Source of the DNA: Octopus bimaculoides
Taxonomy: Eukaryota
Direction: 5' to 3'
DNA length: 40,662 nt
Assembly: GCF_001194135.2 (NCBI RefSeq)
Contig: NC_068991.1
Coordinates: 45,270,158-45,310,819, forward strand
The notes under the pieces were generated by a model. That model did not search any database. It had not been told where the DNA came from and saw nothing but the letters and a program-made list of their open reading frames with translations. The position numbers and the translations under genes are program-made. Below are positions 1,740 to 40,662 of this stretch, piece by piece (the stretch's first letter is position 1; the number at the start of each line of letters is the position of its first letter).

Positions 1740-2178
1740 CCGTATGTATTATGTATATATATTTATCGATTTATATACTTGTGTGTGTGTATTTATCGAT
1801 ATGTATTGATACACACACATAGCTCGATAATGATGTACATATATATATATATGTGTGCGTATGTGTGTGTGTGTGCGTATCCGTATGTATGTATGTACAA
1901 GTGTGTGTGTGTATGTGTGTATGTATGTATGTATGTATGTATGTACGGTTATATACCACACCGTAATTTCTAAGATAGCGATGGAAACAAACACAATTAA
2001 TTATTTACAACTTTCTCTGACGGAAATGCCAAATAGTCACAGATGACACTTTACATAGATATAAGTACATATATGTATGTGCTTGTGACTGTGTGTGTAT
2101 GTGTGTGTGAGTGTACGTGTGTGTATGTGTGCGCGCTTGTATGCATATATGTATGTATATATATAACTATGTATGTAT

Positions 2179-7947: not shown

Positions 7948-8397
7948 GGCAGGGAGAAAATGCTTCGGTTGGAGGATTGAAAAGGTATGTCAACGGACTT
8001 CATAATGTAGCACTTGTTGCTTCTGTTAGCCAGCACAGCGGTGCATTATGCAAAAGAATATGCAAATCATTGGCCGGGTTCAAGAGTAATTTGAATGATT
8101 TTTTCTAGCAATGGATTTTGCTCGTATACGAGAAAGCAGTTACTATATATAGATGTATACCCACGTACGTACGTATGTCTGTGTGTATGTATGTATGTAT
8201 GTATGTATGTATGTATGTATGTATGTATGTATGAACGTATGTATGTATGCATTACGCTTATTTTCCCCTCTGTGAAACCATGGTTCAAATCAGGATTCAA
8301 TTCACAATTATGTAGAGTGTTTACTATATTGTCGAAGTGACAGTTCAGAAGGAAGCTAAGTTTATAAGTTCTAAAATTTCAGAAGAATTCGTTGTTG

Positions 8398-13282: not shown

Positions 13283-13324
13283 CATATATTTATGTACGTA
13301 TAAGTGTGCATGTATGTATGTATG

Positions 13325-13700
13325 ATTTTTAAAAGTTTTATTTAAGCTTTTCTTGAGAGAGTTGAAGCTGTTTGCTAACAAAGCTACAAGACTTTTGGGG
13401 TGGAGAGAGTTCTCGGTGTTTGTAAATATGTGGTTTGGGTTGGTGTGTTTGTTGAGTTGTCAATATACACGCCCAAGTGTGAGCATGTAGTCATCTAAAG
13501 AATTACAGATGGATAATTATTGGAATGTCTAATAAATCTTCACTGTGCCACTAATAAACTGGATTTGGAGAATCTGTGTCAATTTCTTTTGTTCTTTCTA
13601 CGATACGTGCACGCATTCCATAGAATAACTTTCTGAAAATTATAATCCAGATGGATGTACACCACATACCAACACCCCAAAGATAAAACCTACACACGAT
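13325..13700 (-). mobile_element. 3' fragment of an RLE (R4/Dong-like) LINE, CATA-associated lineage
   Basis: Minus strand encodes QIQFISGTVKIY*TF (cf. KIQSLTGTVKFCKTF at ~39548-39592). Its 3' UTR aligns with 40330-40450. It ends AATAAAACTTTTAAAAAT followed by (CATA)3. Confidence 0.75.
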
Positions 13701-14526: not shown

Positions 14527-14815
14527 NNNNNNNNNNNNNNNNNNNNNNNNNNNNNNNNNNNNNNNNNNNNNNNNNNNNNNNNNNNNNNNNNNNNNNNNNN
14601 NNNNNNNNNNNNNNNNNNNNNNNNNNNNNNNNNNNNNNNNNNNNNNNNNNNNNNNNNNNNNNNNNNNNNNNNNNNNNNNNNNNNNNNNNNNNNNNNNNNN
14701 NNNNNNNNNNNNNNNNNNNNNNNNNNNNNNNNNNNNNNNNNNNNNNNNNNNNNNNNNNNNNNNNNNNNNNNNNNNNNNNNNNNNNNNNNNNNNNNNNNNN
14801 NNNNNNNNNNNNNNN

Positions 14816-14852: not shown

Positions 14853-16294
14853 CGGTGGTGATGGAAATGGATATAGATATATATATACACATATACTACA
14901 TATATATATGCTTGCGTCTAACAGAAGAACACACGTATGTATGTATGTATGTATGTATGTACGTATGTATGTATGTACGTAATCGGTACAGTGAGTCCCA
15001 CAAAAGATACTTTGGGTCGCTGAAGGGCTTTGTCAGTGACTGAAAAAAGTGCTATGGTTTACTTTGTAACTTTTTAAAAACTGAAATAATGCTCCAGTTT
15101 GTGAGTTTCAAAATGTATGGAGACAAGATGGAGAGTATATATTCTATATCAGGATTTCAATTAGTGACTGTACTTTATATCTGTAGTTTTGAATGTGTTC
15201 AATATAATTCTTTCCGCTACTGTCTGCAAGTGATAGTTTTACTCTGAAAGCACACACTTTTGTGAAACATTTTGTCATCAAGTGGTAGGGCATGATTGTG
15301 ACAGATTACTTTGGTGCAATTATATTTCTGGGATATTTGGAATACGATGCTTTCCAAGCATCTGTAACTAATTTTCTTATTATTCTTAATGAAGAGTTTG
15401 ACATTGATGCGTGGCGAGAAAGATATATATATATATAATCCAAGAAAGTTAGGGGTTGTGAATCCAACCCACTAAGGGATAATATCTATGCAATACACTG
15501 CCGGAAGGATACCCAATTACTATAACACTAGTGTCTTTACCAAGTGCAATATATGGGTGCAGGTAAAAGGAAATTTTACCCTTAATTTATATAGCAGCAA
15601 TGTCTGCAAGTTGATGAGTACCACATATTCCCCTCCATTTTCTTATTGCTATATATAAATATATATATATATATATATAACGTTATCGATAACATTGTCT
15701 TCTAAGTTTTATTTTAGTTCAGCATATCTGTTCCTGTATCCGTAGCTCGGATATATCATTGACATATCGAGTATAGATAGGAAAACAAGATGGAAAAAAA
15801 AACATTAGTTGATAACGTAACCATCTTGTACACATTTCTACATAAATTAGATTAGCACTGAAAGCTTTATTAATAGCAAACTACGAACCGATGATTAACA
15901 GAGAGATACGGCCCCCCGTGTAATAAACTAAGAACAATTATCATCGTTGTAAATAACTTGAGGTTGACCGTTAAAATTTAAAGCCAGTGTTGATATCATC
16001 ACTAACAACACTATTCCCATGGTCCATCCTGTCTACTACGAAAACGCACGAGTATCTAATGTTAGTAGCAACCATTTTACACAGAAGCTAAGACTGATTA
16101 AGGTCTAGCAACCCTGCTGGATATAACATCGCCATTTCAACTTAAACACAGAGGGCTATAAGGAAAATAGTAAACACGTTAACGAAAAGCATCAAATCAG
16201 GAAAATATCATATTTTCAATATAGCATGTTTAAAAGAAAAATTGCTCCCAATCTACACAAATATGTGTGTGCATGTGTACAATCACGTACACAG

Positions 16295-16343
<49 letters not shown>

Positions 16344-16714
16344 GACGCGCGCGCATGAGTATATAGAGTCATATATTCTTGATACGCATAGAAGTATTCA
16401 TTATTCTCACTTCCGTATAACAAGTTTTAATGTTCCAAGCTGATTCAACACCTTTCCTATTTAATATAACACTGTACCTAAAATTAACTATATAGGCCGC
16501 ATAAATGGACAACTAACATTTCTAACCTACTGAACTAGCGTGCTCTCTCTTCCTCTTTCTCTCTCTCCCTCTGTATATNNNNNNNNNNNNNNNNNNNNNN
16601 NNNNNNNNNNNNNNNNNNNNNNNNNNNNNNNNNNNNNNNNNNNNNNNNNNNNNNNNNNNNNNNNNNNNNNNNNNNNNNNNNNNNNNNNNNNNNNNNNNNN
16701 NNNNNNNNNNNNNN

Positions 16715-16826: not shown

Positions 16827-17140
16827 TGTGTGTGCGTGCGCGCATGCGTGTGTCTAATGCTTACTCTATTGTGCAGTGAAGTTACCAAACTAGCTCAGGT
16901 ATTCCTGCCAAGGTAAAACTCCAACGCAATAAATTTTTTTCCGAAAGCTAAATTTTGGTACTGTGTGAGGATTTGTATGTATGTATCTATGTATGTATGT
17001 ATGTATGTACGTACGTACGTATGTACGTATGTATATATGTATGTATGTACGTATAAACTTAGGTACACATGTATATATGTACCTGTGTGTGTGTGTATGT
17101 ACATATATATATATGTGTGTGTGTGTGCGTATATATATGT

Positions 17141-18944: not shown

Positions 18945-19845
18945 TGGCACAAGTTTGGTCTTATTGCTGGTACGATTTATGTAGGTAGTGGGTTACTACC
19001 CATAGCCTTAGGTATCCACAAGTTTTCAGCTGTCTTTCAAGTGCTTAGAACCCTCCTGATGACCCTTGCTATCCCTAAAAGACAAAATTTCTGTAGGAGC
19101 TCTATCGGGCAGTCTATTTCAATCTCCTTCAGCCATTTGTCTATATTTTTGCTTAATGTTCCCAACGCGCCAATTATTACAGGCATGACCTTTACTATTC
19201 GCATGCTCTAAATTCTTCCTATTTCAAATTTTAAGGGATTCTATTTTCTTGGAATCAAACAGGCATGGTGGGTTGATAAGTAAGCAACTTCACTTTTCCT
19301 TATCTATAATCGTTATATCTGGCCTACTATTTTCTAACTTCTTGTCCGTTTGGATAGAATAGTCTCACAAAATTTTAAATATTTCCGACTCTAGTACTCT
19401 TTCGACTCAATGATTGTACCATGTGTTTCCAGCTTCAAATCCCCATTTCTGGCACAGTTTCCAGTATAAAACTTTTACATCCTGGTCGTGCTTCCATTTC
19501 TTATATTCTTCCTGTGCCAACCTGGAGCATTCTGCCACAAAGTGTGCTACTGTCTCGTTCTAAGTTCCACAGGCTCTACATTTTCCTGACACATTCTCTC
19601 CATATATATTTTTTCACAAGTTCAAATGTATTATTCGCAATTGATCACGCTTGATTTGGGGCTGATACAATTAGACTTTCTACTTCCTTTTTTAATCGCA
19701 CCTTTTTCCAACCAAGCCCTGGATTTTGTTCCATTATACATCTTCAGTGGCACTCAAAATTTGACCATGCAGAGGTTTCCTCACGTGTTCTCTTTGTATT
19801 TCATTCTTCTCTTTTTTTCCTATTACGAGTTTCATCACCTGTTCT
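18945..19845 (-). mobile_element. 5'-truncated R4/Dong-like RLE LINE (zinc knuckle + RLE domain), decayed
   Basis: Minus-strand motifs: KPLHGQI, SRAWLEKG..KKEVESLIVSA, ETVAHFVAECSRLAQEEYKKWKHDQ (CCHC and RHD-like), RPDITIID, VMPVIIGALGT and LQKFCLLGIARVIRRVL. Flanked on both sides by TTA/TTG repeats. Confidence 0.85.
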
Positions 19846-23790: not shown

Positions 23791-23952
23791 TGAGCAATAT
23801 ATGTTTGCGCCTGTATCTGTCTAATTTATTTTATTTGCAACAGTGTGAATGTTCTTTCTTCAATTATATTTTCTTCACCTTTCTTAACCTAGAAACAAAC
23901 TTTCTTCATTAGGAGTCACACATCATTGTCATTTAATGACTATGTACGTATG

Positions 23953-24860
23953 CTCTTTTCTAGTTTTAATTTTGTGAAGTTTTCCTTCAAGTAAAGAGCT
24001 GGTTTCTGTAATAGACATGAATCTCCATCACTGGAACGTAGATAACAAAAGCAATGTCGTATGTTGAACTTGAGAAAAGTTTTGCACTTACAGATTGTAT
24101 TTGTAGCTGGTTGATTGTTTTTTTCTGAAGAAACCCTAGGTTTTCCAGATTGTCACTTAGGCATTTACTAAAAAACACAACCCCCACCCACTCAAAAAAC
24201 AATGTGAATTTATAATCTGGTTAGATAAGCTGGATGTTTTAAGGTAGTTGTATCGAATTTTCGATGAGATAATCACATCAGTAGGATAGTGAGCCTTTAA
24301 AGCGGTACATATTGTTTCTCCCAAACAATTATATCCAGCCTGTTTGGCAGAAGCTTTAATGAGAATGTTTCACCAATATTCCTTGTGTTGATCTGTATGT
24401 ACGTATTTAATAACTGGAAGATTCGCTCTTGATCTCAGCACATTCATTTTCTTTCTTATGGCATTGTATATTATTTTGGCGACAAAGTCATGTCGCGCTG
24501 GGAGGCAGTAACTTGATGATATTTTTTCTGCAGCTGCTGATGATATTTTATGTCTTCCACAGAAATATGACATTATCGACATTTTTTCAGTTGCATCTTG
24601 GGAGTTCAAGGGCTTCACTATTTCTTTTCTTTATTTGGTATCTTGTAGCGAACTCCTGCTCTAGGATTGCAAACGCATAGCCTTCGAAGTACAGTGTAAG
24701 GCGGCAATCGCGAATCCAAGGATGGTTTCAATTCATGGCGATATTAATGTCATTTTCGGGTGTTCGGGAAACATATCCAAGCATAGTCATTTTCTCTTTT
24801 CTTTTCTTTCTTTTCTGCACGCTGAGCGTTTTATACCCAGCTTCTCTTTGAGTGTTACTT
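23953..24860 (-). mobile_element. Decayed RLE (R4/Dong-like) LINE 3' fragment, CATA-associated lineage
   Basis: Minus-strand motifs: YFEGYAFAILEQEFATRY, YCLPARHDFVAKIIYNAIRKK, HKEYW*N, PDYKF and SKCLSDNLENLGF..LQIQSVS. The 3' UTR aligns with 39700-39796 and ends at CATACGTACATA. Confidence 0.8.
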
Positions 24861-25384
24861 CAGTTGCCTCTTGATACAGTATACATATGGTTGTGTGTAT
24901 CTGGGATCTAGTTTTTTTCCATTCGCAAAATATGCATTTTTAAAAGGAAGTAAAAAATCTGAAAATCGGTTAAATAATGTAGCCTTACAGTCTCATTGCT
25001 TTGAAGGTGTGATGCTGTGGAGAAAAAATTGGAGAAAAAAGTTACAGAGGTTTAAAAATCGAAAAAAACTGTGTATTTTTAGCCAATAGCCAGAGAGAAA
25101 ATACCTGCGTTTAGCGGAGCGGTGTCAACTTTAAGGTAGTACCCTGTGAAATTTATAGTTTAGCGTCTGACCTGTTCATTGTAGGTTTCTAAATAATCAG
25201 AAATACCTAATAAAATCAACATGTATCATCTTACTGTTTCTTTTGTCTCTTCATTGATTGTATTTTTAATTTTTTTTTAAATTTGTTATATTAATATATT
25301 TGTATGCATATGTTTACTTCATGCGTTTTTCAGTATTATGTATACCTGTCATGTATTTGTGTACACCAGTAATATATAAGCGCA

Positions 25385-28882: not shown

Positions 28883-29826
28883 NNNNNNNNNNNNNNNNNN
28901 NNNNNNNNNNNNNNNNNNNNNNNNNNNNNNNNNNNNNNNNNNNNNNNNNNNNNNNNNNNNNNNNNNNNNNNNNNNNNNNNNNNNNNNNNNNNNNNNNNNN
29001 NNNNNNNNNNNNNNNNNNNNNNNNNNNNNNNNNNNNNNNNNNNNNNNNNNNNNNNNNNNNNNNNNNNNNNNNNNNNNNNNNNNNNNNNNNNNNNNNNNNN
29101 NNNNNNNNNNNNNNNNNNNNNNNNNNNNNNNNNNNNNNNNNNNNNNNNNNNNNNNNNNNNNNNNNNNNNNNNNNNNNNNNNNNNNNNNNNNNNNNNNNNN
29201 NNNNNNNNNNNNNNNNNNNNNNNNNNNNNNNNNNNNNNNNNNNNNNNNNNNNNNNNNNNNNNNNNNNNNNNNNNNNNNNNNNNNNNNNNNNNNNNNNNNN
29301 NNNNNNNNNNNNNNNNNNNNNNNNNNNNNNNNNNNNNNNNNNNNNNNNNNNNNNNNNNNNNNNNNNNNNNNNNNNNNNNNNNNNNNNNNNNNNNNNNNNN
29401 NNNNNNNNNNNNNNNNNNNNNNNNNNNNNNNNNNNNNNNNNNNNNNNNNNNNNNNNNNNNNNNNNNNNNNNNNNNNNNNNNNNNNNNNNNNNNNNNNNNN
29501 NNNNNNNNNNNNNNNNNNNNNNNNNNNNNNNNNNNNNNNNNNNNNNNNNNNNNNNNNNNNNNNNNNNNNNNNNNNNNNNNNNNNNNNNNNNNNNNNNNNN
29601 NNNNNNNNNNNNNNNNNNNNNNNNNNNNNNNNNNNNNNNNNNNNNNNNNNNNNNNNNNNNNNNNNNNNNNNNNNNNNNNNNNNNNNNNNNNNNNNNNNNN
29701 NNNNNNNNNNNNNNNNNNNNNNNNNNNNNNNNNNNNNNNNNNNNNNNNNNNNNNNNNNNNNNNNNNNNNNNNNNNNNNNNNNNNNNNNNNNNNNNNNNNN
29801 NNNNNNNNNNNNNNNNNNNNNNNNNN

Positions 29827-38815: not shown

Positions 38816-39107
38816 TGAAGTGTTTTCGTTTAAGACTTGATTGATATGAGTTAATTTCCTTTCGATCCATATGATATCTTAGCTATATTTATTCAAACAA
38901 GCTAGAGACAACCTTAACGCTCATTTCGATAGCCCACTCTAGAATACACATTTCTTTGATTATGGTCATCGTCTCCTATAAATATTAATTTTGTTCTTTC
39001 ATTATATTTTTAGTCATTTGTATTCATGGGAAGAAGTCATCGTCATTTTGTGTTTGCGCCATAAGAAGAGATCCATGTGTCAGTGTTGTTATTCTTGAGG
39101 CTCGGGA

Positions 39108-39200
39108 ATGGTGGTGTAGTTGACCAGTTGGCTTTACAACTGCATGATTCTGTTTTCGATCCCACTGAGCATCACCTTAGGAAAGTGTTTTCTGCTATTG
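39108..39200 (+). mobile_element. Diverged CORE-type SINE head
   Basis: TTCGATCCCACTGAGCATCACCTTAGGAAAGTGTTTTCTGCTAT resembles the CORE family. Confidence 0.55.
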
Positions 39201-39292
39201 CATTGATTTGATCCATGCATTGGTACTACAATTCGATTGGCAAAAACTACTTGGGAGAGCATCTTTGCTAGCTATTTGCTTATCAACTACAA

Positions 39293-39424
39293 ACATACAT
39301 ACATACATACATACATACTTGCATACATACATACATACTTGCATACATACATACACACGCACGCACACACAGACACACACGCACACATACATACGTACAT
39401 ACGTACATACATACATACATACAT
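39293..39424. repeat. (CATA)n / (CA)n compound microsatellite
   Basis: Direct reading; it ends exactly at the 5' junction of the LINE at 39425. Confidence 0.95.
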
Positions 39425-39796
39425 TACAAGTTCAGGTTTATACCTGTAATTATTGGAGCACTGGGGTATGTATCATACTGCCTAAATACCAATCTTGAGA
39501 AATTAAACTTCTCAAAACCAGGAAGAAGAAAGCTGATCCAAAGACCAAAAATCCAATCCCTCACCGGAACTGTAAAATTCTGCAAAACTTTCCAGAAGTT
39601 CATCATTTAAGTATATGCATGAGAAGACATACATAAAACAAAACAGACAAATCTGCACGTATACATACATATACACATACATACATACACACAAAAACAT
39701 CCTGTTGTTGATGTTAAAATTCCAATGAAGGGGTCATCGATCTAGGTTAGAAACCGGCTCTTTCAAGAAATCTTGAAATAAAACTGAAAAAAATGA
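39425..39796 (+). mobile_element. 5'-truncated RLE (R4/Dong-like) LINE, copy X, with intact C-terminal frame
   Basis: 39425-39610 reads YKFRFIPVIIGALGYVSYCLNTNLEKLNFSKPGRRKLIQRPKIQSLTGTVKFCKTFQKFII* with no interruption. The 3' UTR ends AATAAAACTGAAAAAAATGA followed by (CATA)3. Confidence 0.85.
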
Positions 39797-39810
39797 CATA
39801 CATACATACA

Positions 39811-40581
39811 AGAAACTACTTACCCCTGAGGCATGATATAGTTGCAAGGAGTACAATGTTATTCGTAGGAAAGATTGCCCGGACGCATACATTAAATGCA
39901 TGTCAGAACCTACAGGTATCCACATTTTTAAAAACAAGAAATACTGGTGGGATACCCTCCACCAAAAAAAAAGACATCAACTCGATACAAACATGACAAA
40001 CCTGATATTGTTCTGTGGGACAGAGAACACAAGTCATGTACTGTTGTACAGGTCAGCTGCCCAGGGGATGTGAGTGTACAGTCAAAAGTCCAGGAAAAGG
40101 AGAACATGTATGGCGAATTAATGCGGTACTTATAGCTCTTGTACCCTGACTTTGAATTCTCATTTGTACCTGTCATCACATCTGCATTAAGTTATGTACC
40201 AACAACTTTTGCACAAAATGCGAGGAATACTCGGTTTCACGGAATCAGAGTAATGGAGACTGACATGAATTTTACTAAATCCAGTTTATTAATGACACAA
40301 TGAAGATTTGCAAGACGTTCCCAGATTCTTATGTGAATAGATGCACACACTTGGATGTATGCATCGACAGTTCAACCAACACACCAACTCAACCACATAT
40401 TAACAAACATCGGCAAAGCTCTTAACTCAAAACGTCTTGTCGCTTTGTTAGCTTTGTAACTATAAAAATAATTTAATTGAAGCTACCCATTCCGTACTCA
40501 ATCTAGATCAGTGCTTCACAACCTTACTTCACTTCCGTTACACTTATATTCTTTCAATTCTCATGAAACTGAACGAAAAAT
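39811..40581 (+). mobile_element. 5'-truncated RLE (R4/Dong-like) LINE, copy Y
   Basis: NYLPLRHDIVAR, HDKPDIVLWDREHKSCTVVQVSCPGD..EKENMYGEL..L*LLYPDFEFSFVPVI and IQFINDTMKICKTF. The 3' UTR aligns with 13325-13510. It ends AAACTGAACGAAAAAT followed by (CATA)4. Confidence 0.85.
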
Positions 40582-40662
40582 CATACATACATACATACAT
40601 AAATACATAAATACATATGAAAGCACGTATGTGTGTATGTATGTATGTATATATGCATATAT

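What the first reader, a model, noticed from the sequence alone, without database searches (positions are those of the whole stretch)
39293..40600. RLE LINE lineage that appears to target (CATA)n microsatellites, with a tandem nested pair
Seen: the arrangement is (CATA)n | copy X (39425-39796) | (CATA)3 | copy Y (39811-40581) | (CATA)4, so both 5' truncation points and both 3' ends lie in CATA repeats. Two more relatives on the minus strand also end in CATA units: 13325 is followed by (CATA)3, and 23953 by CATACGTACATA. All four share the terminus AAAACT-N(2-4)-AAAA(A/G)..|CATAC. Established: R4/Dong-clade RLE retrotransposons can be sequence-specific, Dong targets (TAA)n, and target-specific elements build tandem arrays by inserting into the repeat carried at a previous copy's end. 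Inference: this is a tetranucleotide (CATA/TATG)-specific RLE lineage, which I do not recall being described. It may both exploit and seed the abundant TATG microsatellites of this genome.
Basis: partly seen in the sequence, partly recalled or inferred. Interest (0 to 1): 0.75.

Follow-up and report, generated by a model that had tools for sequence, protein, structure and literature searches.

The report
CATA-microsatellite-inserting RLE LINE fragments
Four decayed, 5'-truncated copies of a restriction-like-endonuclease LINE retrotransposon each end in CATA repeats, and genome-wide reads plus relatives in other animals indicate that the lineage inserts into its own tetranucleotide microsatellite; this is a new target for a known kind of element, not a new kind.

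Summary
X (39425-39796) and Y (39811-40581) lie head to tail, each preceded and followed by sense-strand CATA repeats. Two minus-strand relatives end at 13325 and 23953 in CATA units. The shared terminus motif occurs 4 times against 0.02 expected.

All four are C-terminal fragments (CCHC knuckle, then KPD...E...EK..Y endonuclease) of a LINE. Full-length relatives carry a reverse transcriptase and match only R2 proteins among solved structures.

In raw reads of the same species, essentially every X-family 3' end runs into at least 30 more bases of CATA. Many other 5'-truncated X-family copies abut at least 20 nt of sense CATA at about ten different truncation points. This recurs in three independent assemblies.

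Relatives elsewhere show the same logic with CATA, CTTA or CTGA.

Preferential insertion into (CATA)n is therefore supported. Four points are not shown: strict specificity, the basis of the preference (endonuclease or RNA-tail annealing), R4/Dong membership, and seeding of the genome's TATG arrays. Only 4 of 19 arrays in the window adjoin such an element.

Microsatellite-specific RLE LINEs are already known (Dong, (TAA)n), so I rate this a new variant of a known kind, of moderate interest.

The parts
39294..39424 (+). Compound (CATA)n array interrupted by CACG/CACA units (about 39356-39385). It is the 5' flank of copy X.
39425..39796 (+). Copy X. 39425-39610 holds the last 61 codons plus stop of the RLE-LINE ORF (YKFRFIPVIIGALGYV...GTVKFCKTFQKFII*). 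39611-39796 is the 3'UTR, which contains an internal CATA-like run at 39655-39692 and a terminal block of about 100 nt at 39700-39796.
   Evidence: This family has on the order of 10^3 copies in the same species.
39797..39810 (+). (CATA)3.5. It is the 3' tail of X and at the same time the 5' flank of Y.
   Evidence: Genome-wide, X-family termini continue into CATA.
39811..40581 (+). Copy Y, from a different family. It runs from ...YLPLRHD, just after the CCHC knuckle, through KPDIVLWD...VQVSCPGD...EKENMYG to the ORF end near 40330, with at least two frameshifts and stop codons. The 3'UTR extends to 40581.
   Evidence: (57% identity to P0001, E 7.6e-40). It is 75% identical in DNA to L001.
40582..40601 (+). 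(CATA)5 tail of Y, followed by AATACATAAATACATATG and then an opposite-orientation (TATG)n array.
13325..13640 (-). Copy m13, comprising the last ~35 codons and the 3'UTR. Its 3'UTR is 72.5% identical to Y's over 193 nt. Any extension 5' of about 13640 is too decayed to call.
13310..13324 (-). (CATA)3 tail of m13, as read on the minus strand.
23953..24850 (-). Copy m23, comprising the pre-CCHC linker, the CCHC knuckle, the RLE domain and the 3'UTR, with many stops and frameshifts. Its 5' end lies between 24800 and 24931, next to only a short ACACACAACCATATGTATAC patch.
   Evidence: It is 69% identical in DNA to L002.
23941..23952 (-). Decayed tail of m23, CATACGTACATA.
19019..19613 (-). Distant relative with a CCHC plus RLE C-terminus, about 33% identical to P0196/P0191. 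It is a different family with no CATA tail. Its 3'UTR runs towards an (AAC)n run near 18960-18975.

Best explanation
X, Y, m13 and m23 are dead, 5'-truncated copies of several related families of a single-ORF LINE. The ORF encodes a reverse transcriptase, a CCHC knuckle and a C-terminal restriction-like endonuclease (R2 superfamily, the type that octopus repeat libraries label 'Dong-R4').

Proposed mechanism:
1. The element integrates by target-primed reverse transcription into (CATA)n microsatellites, in one orientation.
2. The TATG strand is nicked.
3. Its 3' end pairs with a (CAUA)n tail on the element RNA and primes cDNA synthesis. Every copy therefore ends ...AAAACTnnnAAAAA(T/G)(N)|CATACATA in the same repeat phase.
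4. The 5' end of the usually incomplete cDNA is joined to the upstream part of the same repeat array, often at short CATA/ACA-like microhomologies.
5. Because each insertion regenerates a CATA array at its 3' end, later insertions, including those of other CATA families, land beside earlier ones. This builds head-to-tail strings such as X-Y.

Shown: the protein architecture, the universal 3' CATA, the recurrent 5' CATA junctions, and the same two-sided pattern in relatives.

Inferred: which strand is nicked, the role of tail annealing, and whether the protein itself recognises CATA.
For: Identity:
- The conserved C..C..H..C - RHD - KPD - E - EK..Y C-terminus is present in 80 homologues.
- Full-length relatives P0092, P0232 and P0233 (1085-1161 aa) carry RVT_1 (E 3e-27 to 1e-28) and no other domain.
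- Their best solved-structure matches are R2 proteins (E 1e-24 to 3e-28).
- A profile of the C-terminal domain matches only the R2 C-terminal endonuclease, and does so collinearly, but the match is weak (E 0.3).

3' end:
- The terminus motif occurs 4 times against 0.02 expected.
- In raw reads of the same species, depth is unchanged across the X terminus into the tail (about 210-235 per strand class on either side).
- The loose ends behind 39807 and 39810 read (CATA)n for all 30 letters shown, with agreement 0.6-0.74 and median overhang 74-88 nt.

5' end:
- With 25 nt of the CATA block kept in the reference, 12 of the 15 best-supported joints go from the block straight to internal positions 39467, 39474, 39477, 39491, 39492, 39551, 39562, 39573, 39574 and 39579. 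A further 52 joints were not shown.
- Without the block, only 9 joints were found.
- The same joints recur in Logan contigs of three samples from three studies and in raw reads. Several non-identical contigs also carry CATA directly before 39425.
- Sense CATA of at least 20 nt covers only about 0.3-0.5% of the window.

Relatives:
- L006 is a 5'-truncated copy with long (CATA)n on both sides, about 290 nt upstream and (CATA)56 downstream.
- L008, L009 and L016 belong to a young full-length family that ends in (CATA)n.
- In the (CTTA)n families, the full-length copies L011 and L013 and copies b and c of L005 start directly after the repeat. L005a, L005c, L007 and L012 end in it.
- L003 ends in (CTGA)62.
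Against: - Not every 5' junction is in the repeat. In the window, m23 is not and m13 is undetermined. Among relatives, L007 has a single ACTT and L003 has a 12-nt tandem repeat.
- I could not count 5' junctions with non-CATA flanks genome-wide. The enrichment is therefore a lower-bound argument, not a measured ratio.
- At 39477, one run shows 174 reads whose upstream parts lack a clear consensus (agreement 0.42).
- Constant repeat phase and tandem strings are also expected from tail annealing or template jumping, without any sequence-specific nuclease.
- No empty site, polymorphic insertion or biochemical datum is available.
- The window is a gapped draft with 12 N runs.
Confidence: 0.7

Rival explanations
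1. CATA is only an element-encoded 3' tail, as in many LINEs with microsatellite tails, and insertion is essentially random. CATA at 5' ends then arises secondarily. One route is the reverse transcriptase jumping from one RNA to the tail of another in a single event. Another is unequal recombination or slippage between the internal and terminal CATA runs of a copy.
For: - The 3' association is universal, while the 5' association is not.
- X carries an internal CATA-like run (39655-39692). Reads show tail-to-39701 joints, which could be slippage duplications of the terminal 100-nt block (section 5c).
- In several relatives the upstream repeat is simply the tail of a preceding copy (L005, L011).
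- R2-type reverse transcriptases are known to template-jump (established knowledge, not tested here).
Against: - X and Y belong to different families, so a single-event jump is less likely.
- The array upstream of X is 130 nt long and is not preceded by an RLE-LINE terminus. The same holds for L006.
- 5'-CATA junctions occur at about ten different truncation points inside the coding region, not only at the internal microsatellite.
- Random insertion predicts under 1% such junctions.
Confidence: 0.17
2. Passive co-occurrence. The elements and CATA arrays both accumulate in the same repeat-rich, low-recombination regions, and the adjacency reflects the very high microsatellite density of this genome.
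For: - The window is extremely microsatellite-rich, with 172 TRF rows and 19 perfect CATA arrays.
- Waldo-A/B near CA repeats in Drosophila has been explained in this way (PMC3812793).
Against: - The adjacency is exact to the base, strand-specific and in constant phase at all four 3' ends.
- The motif-plus-CATA pattern has 0.02 matches expected by chance.
- Genome-wide, the termini continue directly into CATA.
Confidence: 0.03
3. The element is a member of a family already described and named (Repbase/Dfam 'Dong-R4' or HERO consensus from octopus) whose CATA specificity is already recorded. Nothing here would then be new.
For: - Dong-R4 LINEs are annotated in Octopus vulgaris (5 recently active families, 1129 insertions) and O. 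bimaculoides (PMC13282606, PMC9115989, PMC8967140).
- HERO families with microsatellite specificity are recorded in Repbase Reports, cited in PMC4640811.
Against: - None of the papers I could search mentions a CATA or other tetranucleotide target for an RLE LINE.
- PMC7998251 states that Dong targets (TAA)n in most insects, molluscs and cnidarians.
- Repbase and Dfam themselves could not be consulted.
Confidence: 0.3

Closest known systems
Dong (Bombyx mori) and Dong-like elements of the R4 clade
   Same: Both have a single ORF with reverse transcriptase, a CCHC knuckle and a C-terminal restriction-like endonuclease, with no APE domain. Both are flanked by a microsatellite on both sides, form head-to-tail strings, and are frequently 5'-truncated. 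'Dong-R4' is the label under which such LINEs are annotated in cephalopods (PMC7998251, PMC3812793, PMC13282606).
   Different: Dong's target is the trinucleotide (TAA)n. Here it is the tetranucleotide (CATA)n, with sister families on (CTTA)n and (CTGA)n. Clade membership by RT phylogeny was not tested. The HDV-like 5' ribozyme known for Dong and R4 (PMC3774820) was not detected by Rfam in the relatives.
Waldo (WaldoAg1/2, WaldoFs1), R1 clade
   Same: Waldo inserts sequence-specifically into (ACAY)n microsatellites, which include ACAT = CATA (PMC3812793).
   Different: Waldo uses an APE-type endonuclease and belongs to an unrelated LINE group. The elements here carry an RLE and lack APE.
HERO clade families and Togen ((TG)n), the other RLE LINEs with microsatellite targets
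   Same: They are RLE-encoding elements, and some families are specific for microsatellites (PMC4640811).
   Different: Their targets differ or are not given in the accessible text. No reference sequences were available to test relatedness.
R2 (28S rDNA-specific)
   Same: R2 proteins are the best solved-structure matches for the RT and for the C-terminal CCHC/RLE region. Its TPRT mechanism is the model used here.
   Different: R2 has N-terminal zinc-finger and Myb domains and targets a unique rDNA site. No N-terminal zinc finger was found here, and the target is a simple repeat.
Stringent-type LINEs with microsatellite tails (for example eel UnaL2, RTE elements)
   Same: The 3' end consists of a short tandem repeat that can pair with the nicked target (from my own knowledge; RTE tails are covered in PMC2887409 and PMC9115989).
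   Different: Those elements are APE-type and insert at dispersed sites. Their 5' flanks are not the repeat.

Membership tests
RLE-encoding non-LTR retrotransposons (R2 superfamily) | Reverse transcriptase domain in the same ORF | tested here: met
   It is absent from the truncated window copies. It is present in full-length relatives that align to them: P0092, P0232 and P0233 carry RVT_1 at E 3e-27 to 1e-28.
RLE-encoding non-LTR retrotransposons (R2 superfamily) | CCHC knuckle followed by a PD-(D/E)xK-type endonuclease at the C-terminus | tested here: met
   m23 and the relatives carry C-x2-C-x7-H-x4-C followed by RHD. Y carries KPDIVLWD...VQVSCPGD...EKENMYG. These align collinearly with the C-terminal endonuclease of R2 proteins, but only weakly (E 0.3). 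No fold prediction was possible.
RLE-encoding non-LTR retrotransposons (R2 superfamily) | No APE endonuclease and no LTRs; 5' truncation of copies | tested here: met
   Pfam finds only RVT_1, plus a weak zf-RVT hit. All four window copies are 5'-truncated.
R4/Dong clade | Placement inside the clade in an RT phylogeny with reference elements (R4, Dong, Rex6) | not testable with these tools
   No reference sequences were obtainable.
R4/Dong clade | No N-terminal zinc fingers; divergent Myb/SANT-like N-terminal domain (PMC7998251) | tested here: inconclusive
   Pfam finds no N-terminal zinc finger or Myb domain in P0232, P0233 or P0227, even at E up to 10. The divergent Myb domain needs a profile-profile search, which was not available.
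R4/Dong clade | HDV-like self-cleaving ribozyme at the 5' end (PMC3774820) | tested here: inconclusive
   Rfam at gathering threshold gives no hit on L005, L006, L007, L008 or L010. A conserved 5' motif ...GGACGTGTT... exists, but its structure was not analysed.
Dong proper | Insertion into (TAA)n | tested here: not met
   The flanking repeat is CATA in the window, L006 and L008, and CTTA or CTGA in sister families.
Microsatellite-specific LINE (operational criterion of Kojima and Fujiwara: the same repeat at both junctions in most copies) | Target repeat at the 3' junction | tested here: met
   All 4 window copies have it. Essentially all X-family reads crossing the terminus continue into the repeat.
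Microsatellite-specific LINE (operational criterion of Kojima and Fujiwara: the same repeat at both junctions in most copies) | Target repeat at the 5' junction in the same orientation | tested here: inconclusive
   The feature is met for X, Y and L006, and for many genome-wide truncated copies. It is not met for m23 and is undetermined for m13. The share of all 5' junctions that carry the repeat could not be measured.
Waldo (R1 clade) | APE-type endonuclease N-terminal to the RT | tested here: not met
   The full-length relatives have no APE domain, and an RLE is present instead.

The most novel reading that the evidence does not exclude
These fragments belong to a radiation of RLE LINEs in molluscs and other marine invertebrates. 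Within it, closely related families have repeatedly switched between tetranucleotide microsatellite targets of the form C-N-N-A (CATA, CTTA, CTGA). The target would be read by the protein (N-terminal domain and/or CCHC-RLE) as well as by RNA-tail pairing. That would make the group a natural series for learning how RLE LINE target choice is re-programmed.
Probability: 0.3. Interest if true: 0.7.

Novelty: new variant of a known kind. Interest (0 to 1): 0.5.

Why it matters
R2-type elements are being developed for site-specific insertion of DNA (PMC13580325), and what sets their target is an open practical question. A group of close relatives that differ mainly in which tetranucleotide repeat they enter would give matched protein and target pairs for comparison.

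For octopus genomics, the finding explains why 'Dong-R4' copies sit in head-to-tail strings inside CATA arrays. It also warns that these arrays and their flanks are not independent markers.

It does not explain the overall abundance of TATG/CATA microsatellites in this genome.

Tried and rejected
1. A protein search with the X-family consensus peptide found no candidate. A search with the read-through Y peptide gave one hit. All three search slots are now spent.
2. Scans of viral contigs and genome contigs for relatives found none.
3. Several contig look-ups gave no junction information: L002, L015, and L016 at its 5' side.
4. I tried to place m13's 5' end with a transition-tolerant DNA alignment and to test for A-to-G hyper-editing. 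The alignment upstream of about 13640 is unconvincing and the substitutions are symmetric (A>G 16, G>A 18), so both ideas were dropped.
5. Reads laid on the m13 terminus were swamped by the microsatellite-like flank. The m13-type last 25-50 nt is rare, so this was uninformative.
6. Plain loose-end tables could not show 5' flanks, because subfamily break points dominate them. Keeping a short CATA block in the reference solved this.
7. Rfam found no ribozyme or other family in the relatives. ARAGORN found no tRNA in the SINE-like segment upstream of X.
10. No suitable high-copy repeat lies next to another CATA array in the window, so an empirical negative control for the joint method could not be run.

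Full report
**What is in the sequence**

Reading 39100-40662 confirms the layout. A compound (CATA)n array (39294-39424) is followed by copy X (39425-39796), then CATACATACATAC, then copy Y (39811-40581), then (CATA)5 at 40582-40601. On the minus strand, m13 ends at 13325 followed by (CATA)3, and m23 ends at 23953 followed by CATACGTACATA.

The shared terminus, written loosely as AAACT-N(2-6)-AAAA-N(1-4)-CATAC, matches these four places and no others. Shuffles give 0.02 expected matches.

Some details need correction:
- Y reads GAAACT, not AAAACT.
- Y's tail has five units.
- X and Y are not copies of one family. BLASTN finds no similarity between them, whereas the 3'UTRs of Y and m13 are 72.5% identical over 193 nt.

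**What the copies are**

Translation shows that X holds the last 61 codons of an ORF (YKFRFIPVIIGALGYV...GTVKFCKTFQKFII*). Y holds, across frameshifts and stops...YLPLRHD...EYWWD...KPDIVLWD...VQVSCPGD...EKENMYG.... m23 reaches further upstream, through a C-x2-C...H-x4-C knuckle.

Eighty database proteins share this C-terminus. TBLASTN with them finds five places in the window: the four copies and a distant fifth at 19019-19613 (-).

Full-length relatives of 1085-1161 aa (P0092, P0232, P0233) have RVT_1 as their only clear Pfam domain. Their best solved-structure matches are R2 retrotransposon proteins, at E 1e-24 to 3e-28. A second aligned stretch covers the CCHC/RHD region.

A profile of the C-terminal 175 residues matches only the C-terminal endonuclease of R2 proteins. 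The match is collinear through KPD and EK..Y but weak (E 0.3).

So these are remains of a restriction-like-endonuclease (RLE) LINE. Octopus repeat libraries already list such elements as 'Dong-R4', abundant and recently active.

I could not test clade membership.

**The 3' end genome-wide**

DNA runs of the same organism hold the flank of the locus. About 1.9 Gb of raw reads were sampled per run. The single-copy flank has depth of about 0.9, while the X coding part reaches about 1000 per strand class. The family therefore has on the order of 10^3 copies.

I laid reads on 39697-39870, which covers X's last 100 nt, its 14-nt tail and the low-copy start of Y. Depth does not fall between the last bases of the element and the tail (about 210-235 per class on both sides). 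The parts of reads that run on beyond 39807 and 39810 read CATA repeats for all 30 letters shown, with agreement 0.6-0.74 and median overhang 74-88 nt. Essentially every copy that keeps this terminus is followed by a CATA array, typically well over 40 nt.

**The 5' end genome-wide**

Plain clipped-read tables were useless, because subfamily break points dominate them.

Keeping 25 nt of the upstream CATA block in the reference (39400-39616) turned other copies' junctions into 'skip' joints. Of the 15 best-supported joints, 12 lead from the CATA block (39423/39424) straight to internal positions 39467, 39474, 39477, 39491, 39492, 39551, 39562, 39573, 39574 and 39579. They are seen in Logan contigs and in raw reads, and 52 more joints were not shown. 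The same stretch without the block had given only 9 joints.

I repeated this on 39400-39500 with contigs from three samples of three studies. The same joints recur. Several non-identical contigs also carry CATA directly in front of 39425, as in the window copy. About 240 contigs per run simply continue upstream into element sequence.

Some joints fall at CATA/ACA-like motifs inside the element (39474-39478 is CATAC). This fits joining by microhomology.

For comparison, sense-strand CATA arrays of at least 20 nt cover only about 0.3-0.5% of the non-N window per orientation. I could not count 5' junctions with other flanks, so the enrichment is argued, not measured.

Within the window, m23's 5' end (24800-24931) is not in a clean array and m13's cannot be placed.

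**Relatives elsewhere**

Contigs that encode homologues show the same pattern, with family-specific repeats.

(CATA)n:
- L006 is a 5'-truncated copy with about 290 nt of (CATA)n upstream and (CATA)56 downstream. The upstream array is interspersed with 12-nt mini-copies, ATGAATGTAAAG, that resemble the element's own terminus.
- L008, L009, L010 and L016 are one young family with an intact 1130-1135-aa ORF. L008, L009 and L016 end ...TTAGAAACGAA|(CATA)n; L010's contig stops inside the 3'UTR, before the terminus.

(CTTA)n:
- L005 holds four elements head to tail. Copies a and c end in (CTTG/CTTA)n, and copies b and c start directly after such arrays.
- L011 is full length and starts right after (CTTA)19, which itself follows another copy's terminus.
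- L013 is full length and starts right after (CTTA)n at the contig edge.
- L007 and L012 end in (CTTA)n.

(CTGA)n:
- L003 ends in (CTGA)62.

Exceptions:
- L007's 5' flank has only one ACTT.
- L003's 5' flank is a 12-nt tandem repeat.

In a rough neighbour-joining tree of the C-terminal domains, the CTTA families cluster together. The cephalopod sequences (window Y, L001, L002, Argonauta P0003) group with the CATA family of L008. That tree has no support values.

**Mechanism**

The simplest reading is R2-like target-primed reverse transcription into the repeat. The TATG strand is nicked, and its end pairs with a (CAUA)n RNA tail and primes cDNA synthesis. This explains the constant phase (...|CATA) at every 3' junction. 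The truncated cDNA end is then joined to the upstream repeat.

Each insertion leaves a fresh CATA array, so later insertions stack up. In the window this involves two different families.

The data do not show whether the protein recognises CATA or whether tail pairing alone gives the preference.

The main rival is a tail-only element whose 5' CATA comes from template jumping or from slippage between internal and terminal CATA runs. It is weakened by four observations:
- X and Y belong to different families.
- The arrays upstream of X and of L006 are not preceded by an element terminus.
- The truncation points lie inside the coding sequence and are varied.
- The chance expectation is low.

The rival is not excluded. 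Reads with tail-to-39701 joints (section 5c) could well be slippage duplications of X's terminal block.

**Seeding of microsatellites**

Of the 19 perfect CATA arrays in the window, 15 have no such terminus beside them. Array-derived read depth also dwarfs element depth. The idea that this lineage seeds the genome's TATG arrays is therefore unsupported.

**Comparison with what is known**

- Microsatellite-specific RLE LINEs are established. [quoted passage not shown] Some HERO families and Togen ((TG)n) are further examples (PMC4640811).
- ACAY repeats are the known target of the APE-type Waldo elements (PMC3812793).
- Dong-R4 LINEs are annotated in octopus, but no target is mentioned.

A tetranucleotide (CATA) target for an RLE LINE, with sister families on CTTA and CTGA, was not found in the searchable literature. 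Repbase and Dfam could not be checked.

I rate it a new variant of a known kind, with interest 0.5.

Noticed in passing
window 19019-19613 (-), 3'UTR to about 18960: A fifth, distant RLE-LINE fragment with CCHC plus RLE, about 33% identical to P0196/P0191. It has no CATA tail, and its 3'UTR runs into AACAACAACAACAA. It may belong to a family with a different repeat tail.
   Followed up: partly
window 39090-39293 (+): A segment of about 200 nt with tRNA-like A/B-box-looking motifs (TGGTGTAGT..., TTCGATCCCA) ends exactly at the CATA array upstream of X. This gives a string of three head-to-tail units. ARAGORN finds no tRNA, there is no other copy in the window, and read depth is single-copy at 80% likeness.
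   Followed up: partly
L003, L005, L006, L007, L008, L011-L013 (3' junctions): The tail units of the related families are CATA, CTTA and CTGA, all of the form C-N-N-A. The first tail base after the element is always C.
   Followed up: no
L006 1992-2283: The upstream CATA array is interspersed with at least five copies of a 12-13-nt motif, (A)ATGAATGTAAAG, that resembles the element's own terminus (AATGAAATGAATTTTAATCAAAG). These look like abortive or re-initiated reverse transcription products.
   Followed up: no
window 39655-39692 and 39700-39796: X's 3'UTR contains an internal CATA-like run. Genome reads show the terminus plus a short tail followed again by the block that starts at 39701 (...AAAAATAC|CCTGTTG). 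This indicates tandem duplication of the terminal 100 nt, by slippage or by very short insertions.
   Followed up: partly
L005 11343, L007 about 470, L010 1-30, L013 60-90: Full-length relatives share a 5'-terminal motif, ACCG(Y)G...GG(A/T)(C/T)GTGTT, within about 30 nt of their start. It might be part of a 5' ribozyme or a promoter. Rfam found nothing at gathering threshold.
   Followed up: partly
window 39616 (joints): Some X-family copies have CATA repeats directly after position 39616, a few bases past the stop codon. This points to a subfamily with almost no 3'UTR.
   Followed up: no
window, 12 N runs (for example 386-1008, 14527-14815, 16579-16714, 28883-29826): About 4.2 kb of the window is assembly gap, and most gaps lie next to microsatellites. 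Some element ends and arrays may therefore be missing.
   Followed up: no
window 1883-1943, 8184-8249, 14935-14975, 16988-17047 (minus-strand CATA arrays): Several CATA arrays without an RLE terminus are preceded by ...CGTA|CATA or ...CGTAATG|CATA. I did not test whether another repeat family with a CATA tail lies there.
   Followed up: no
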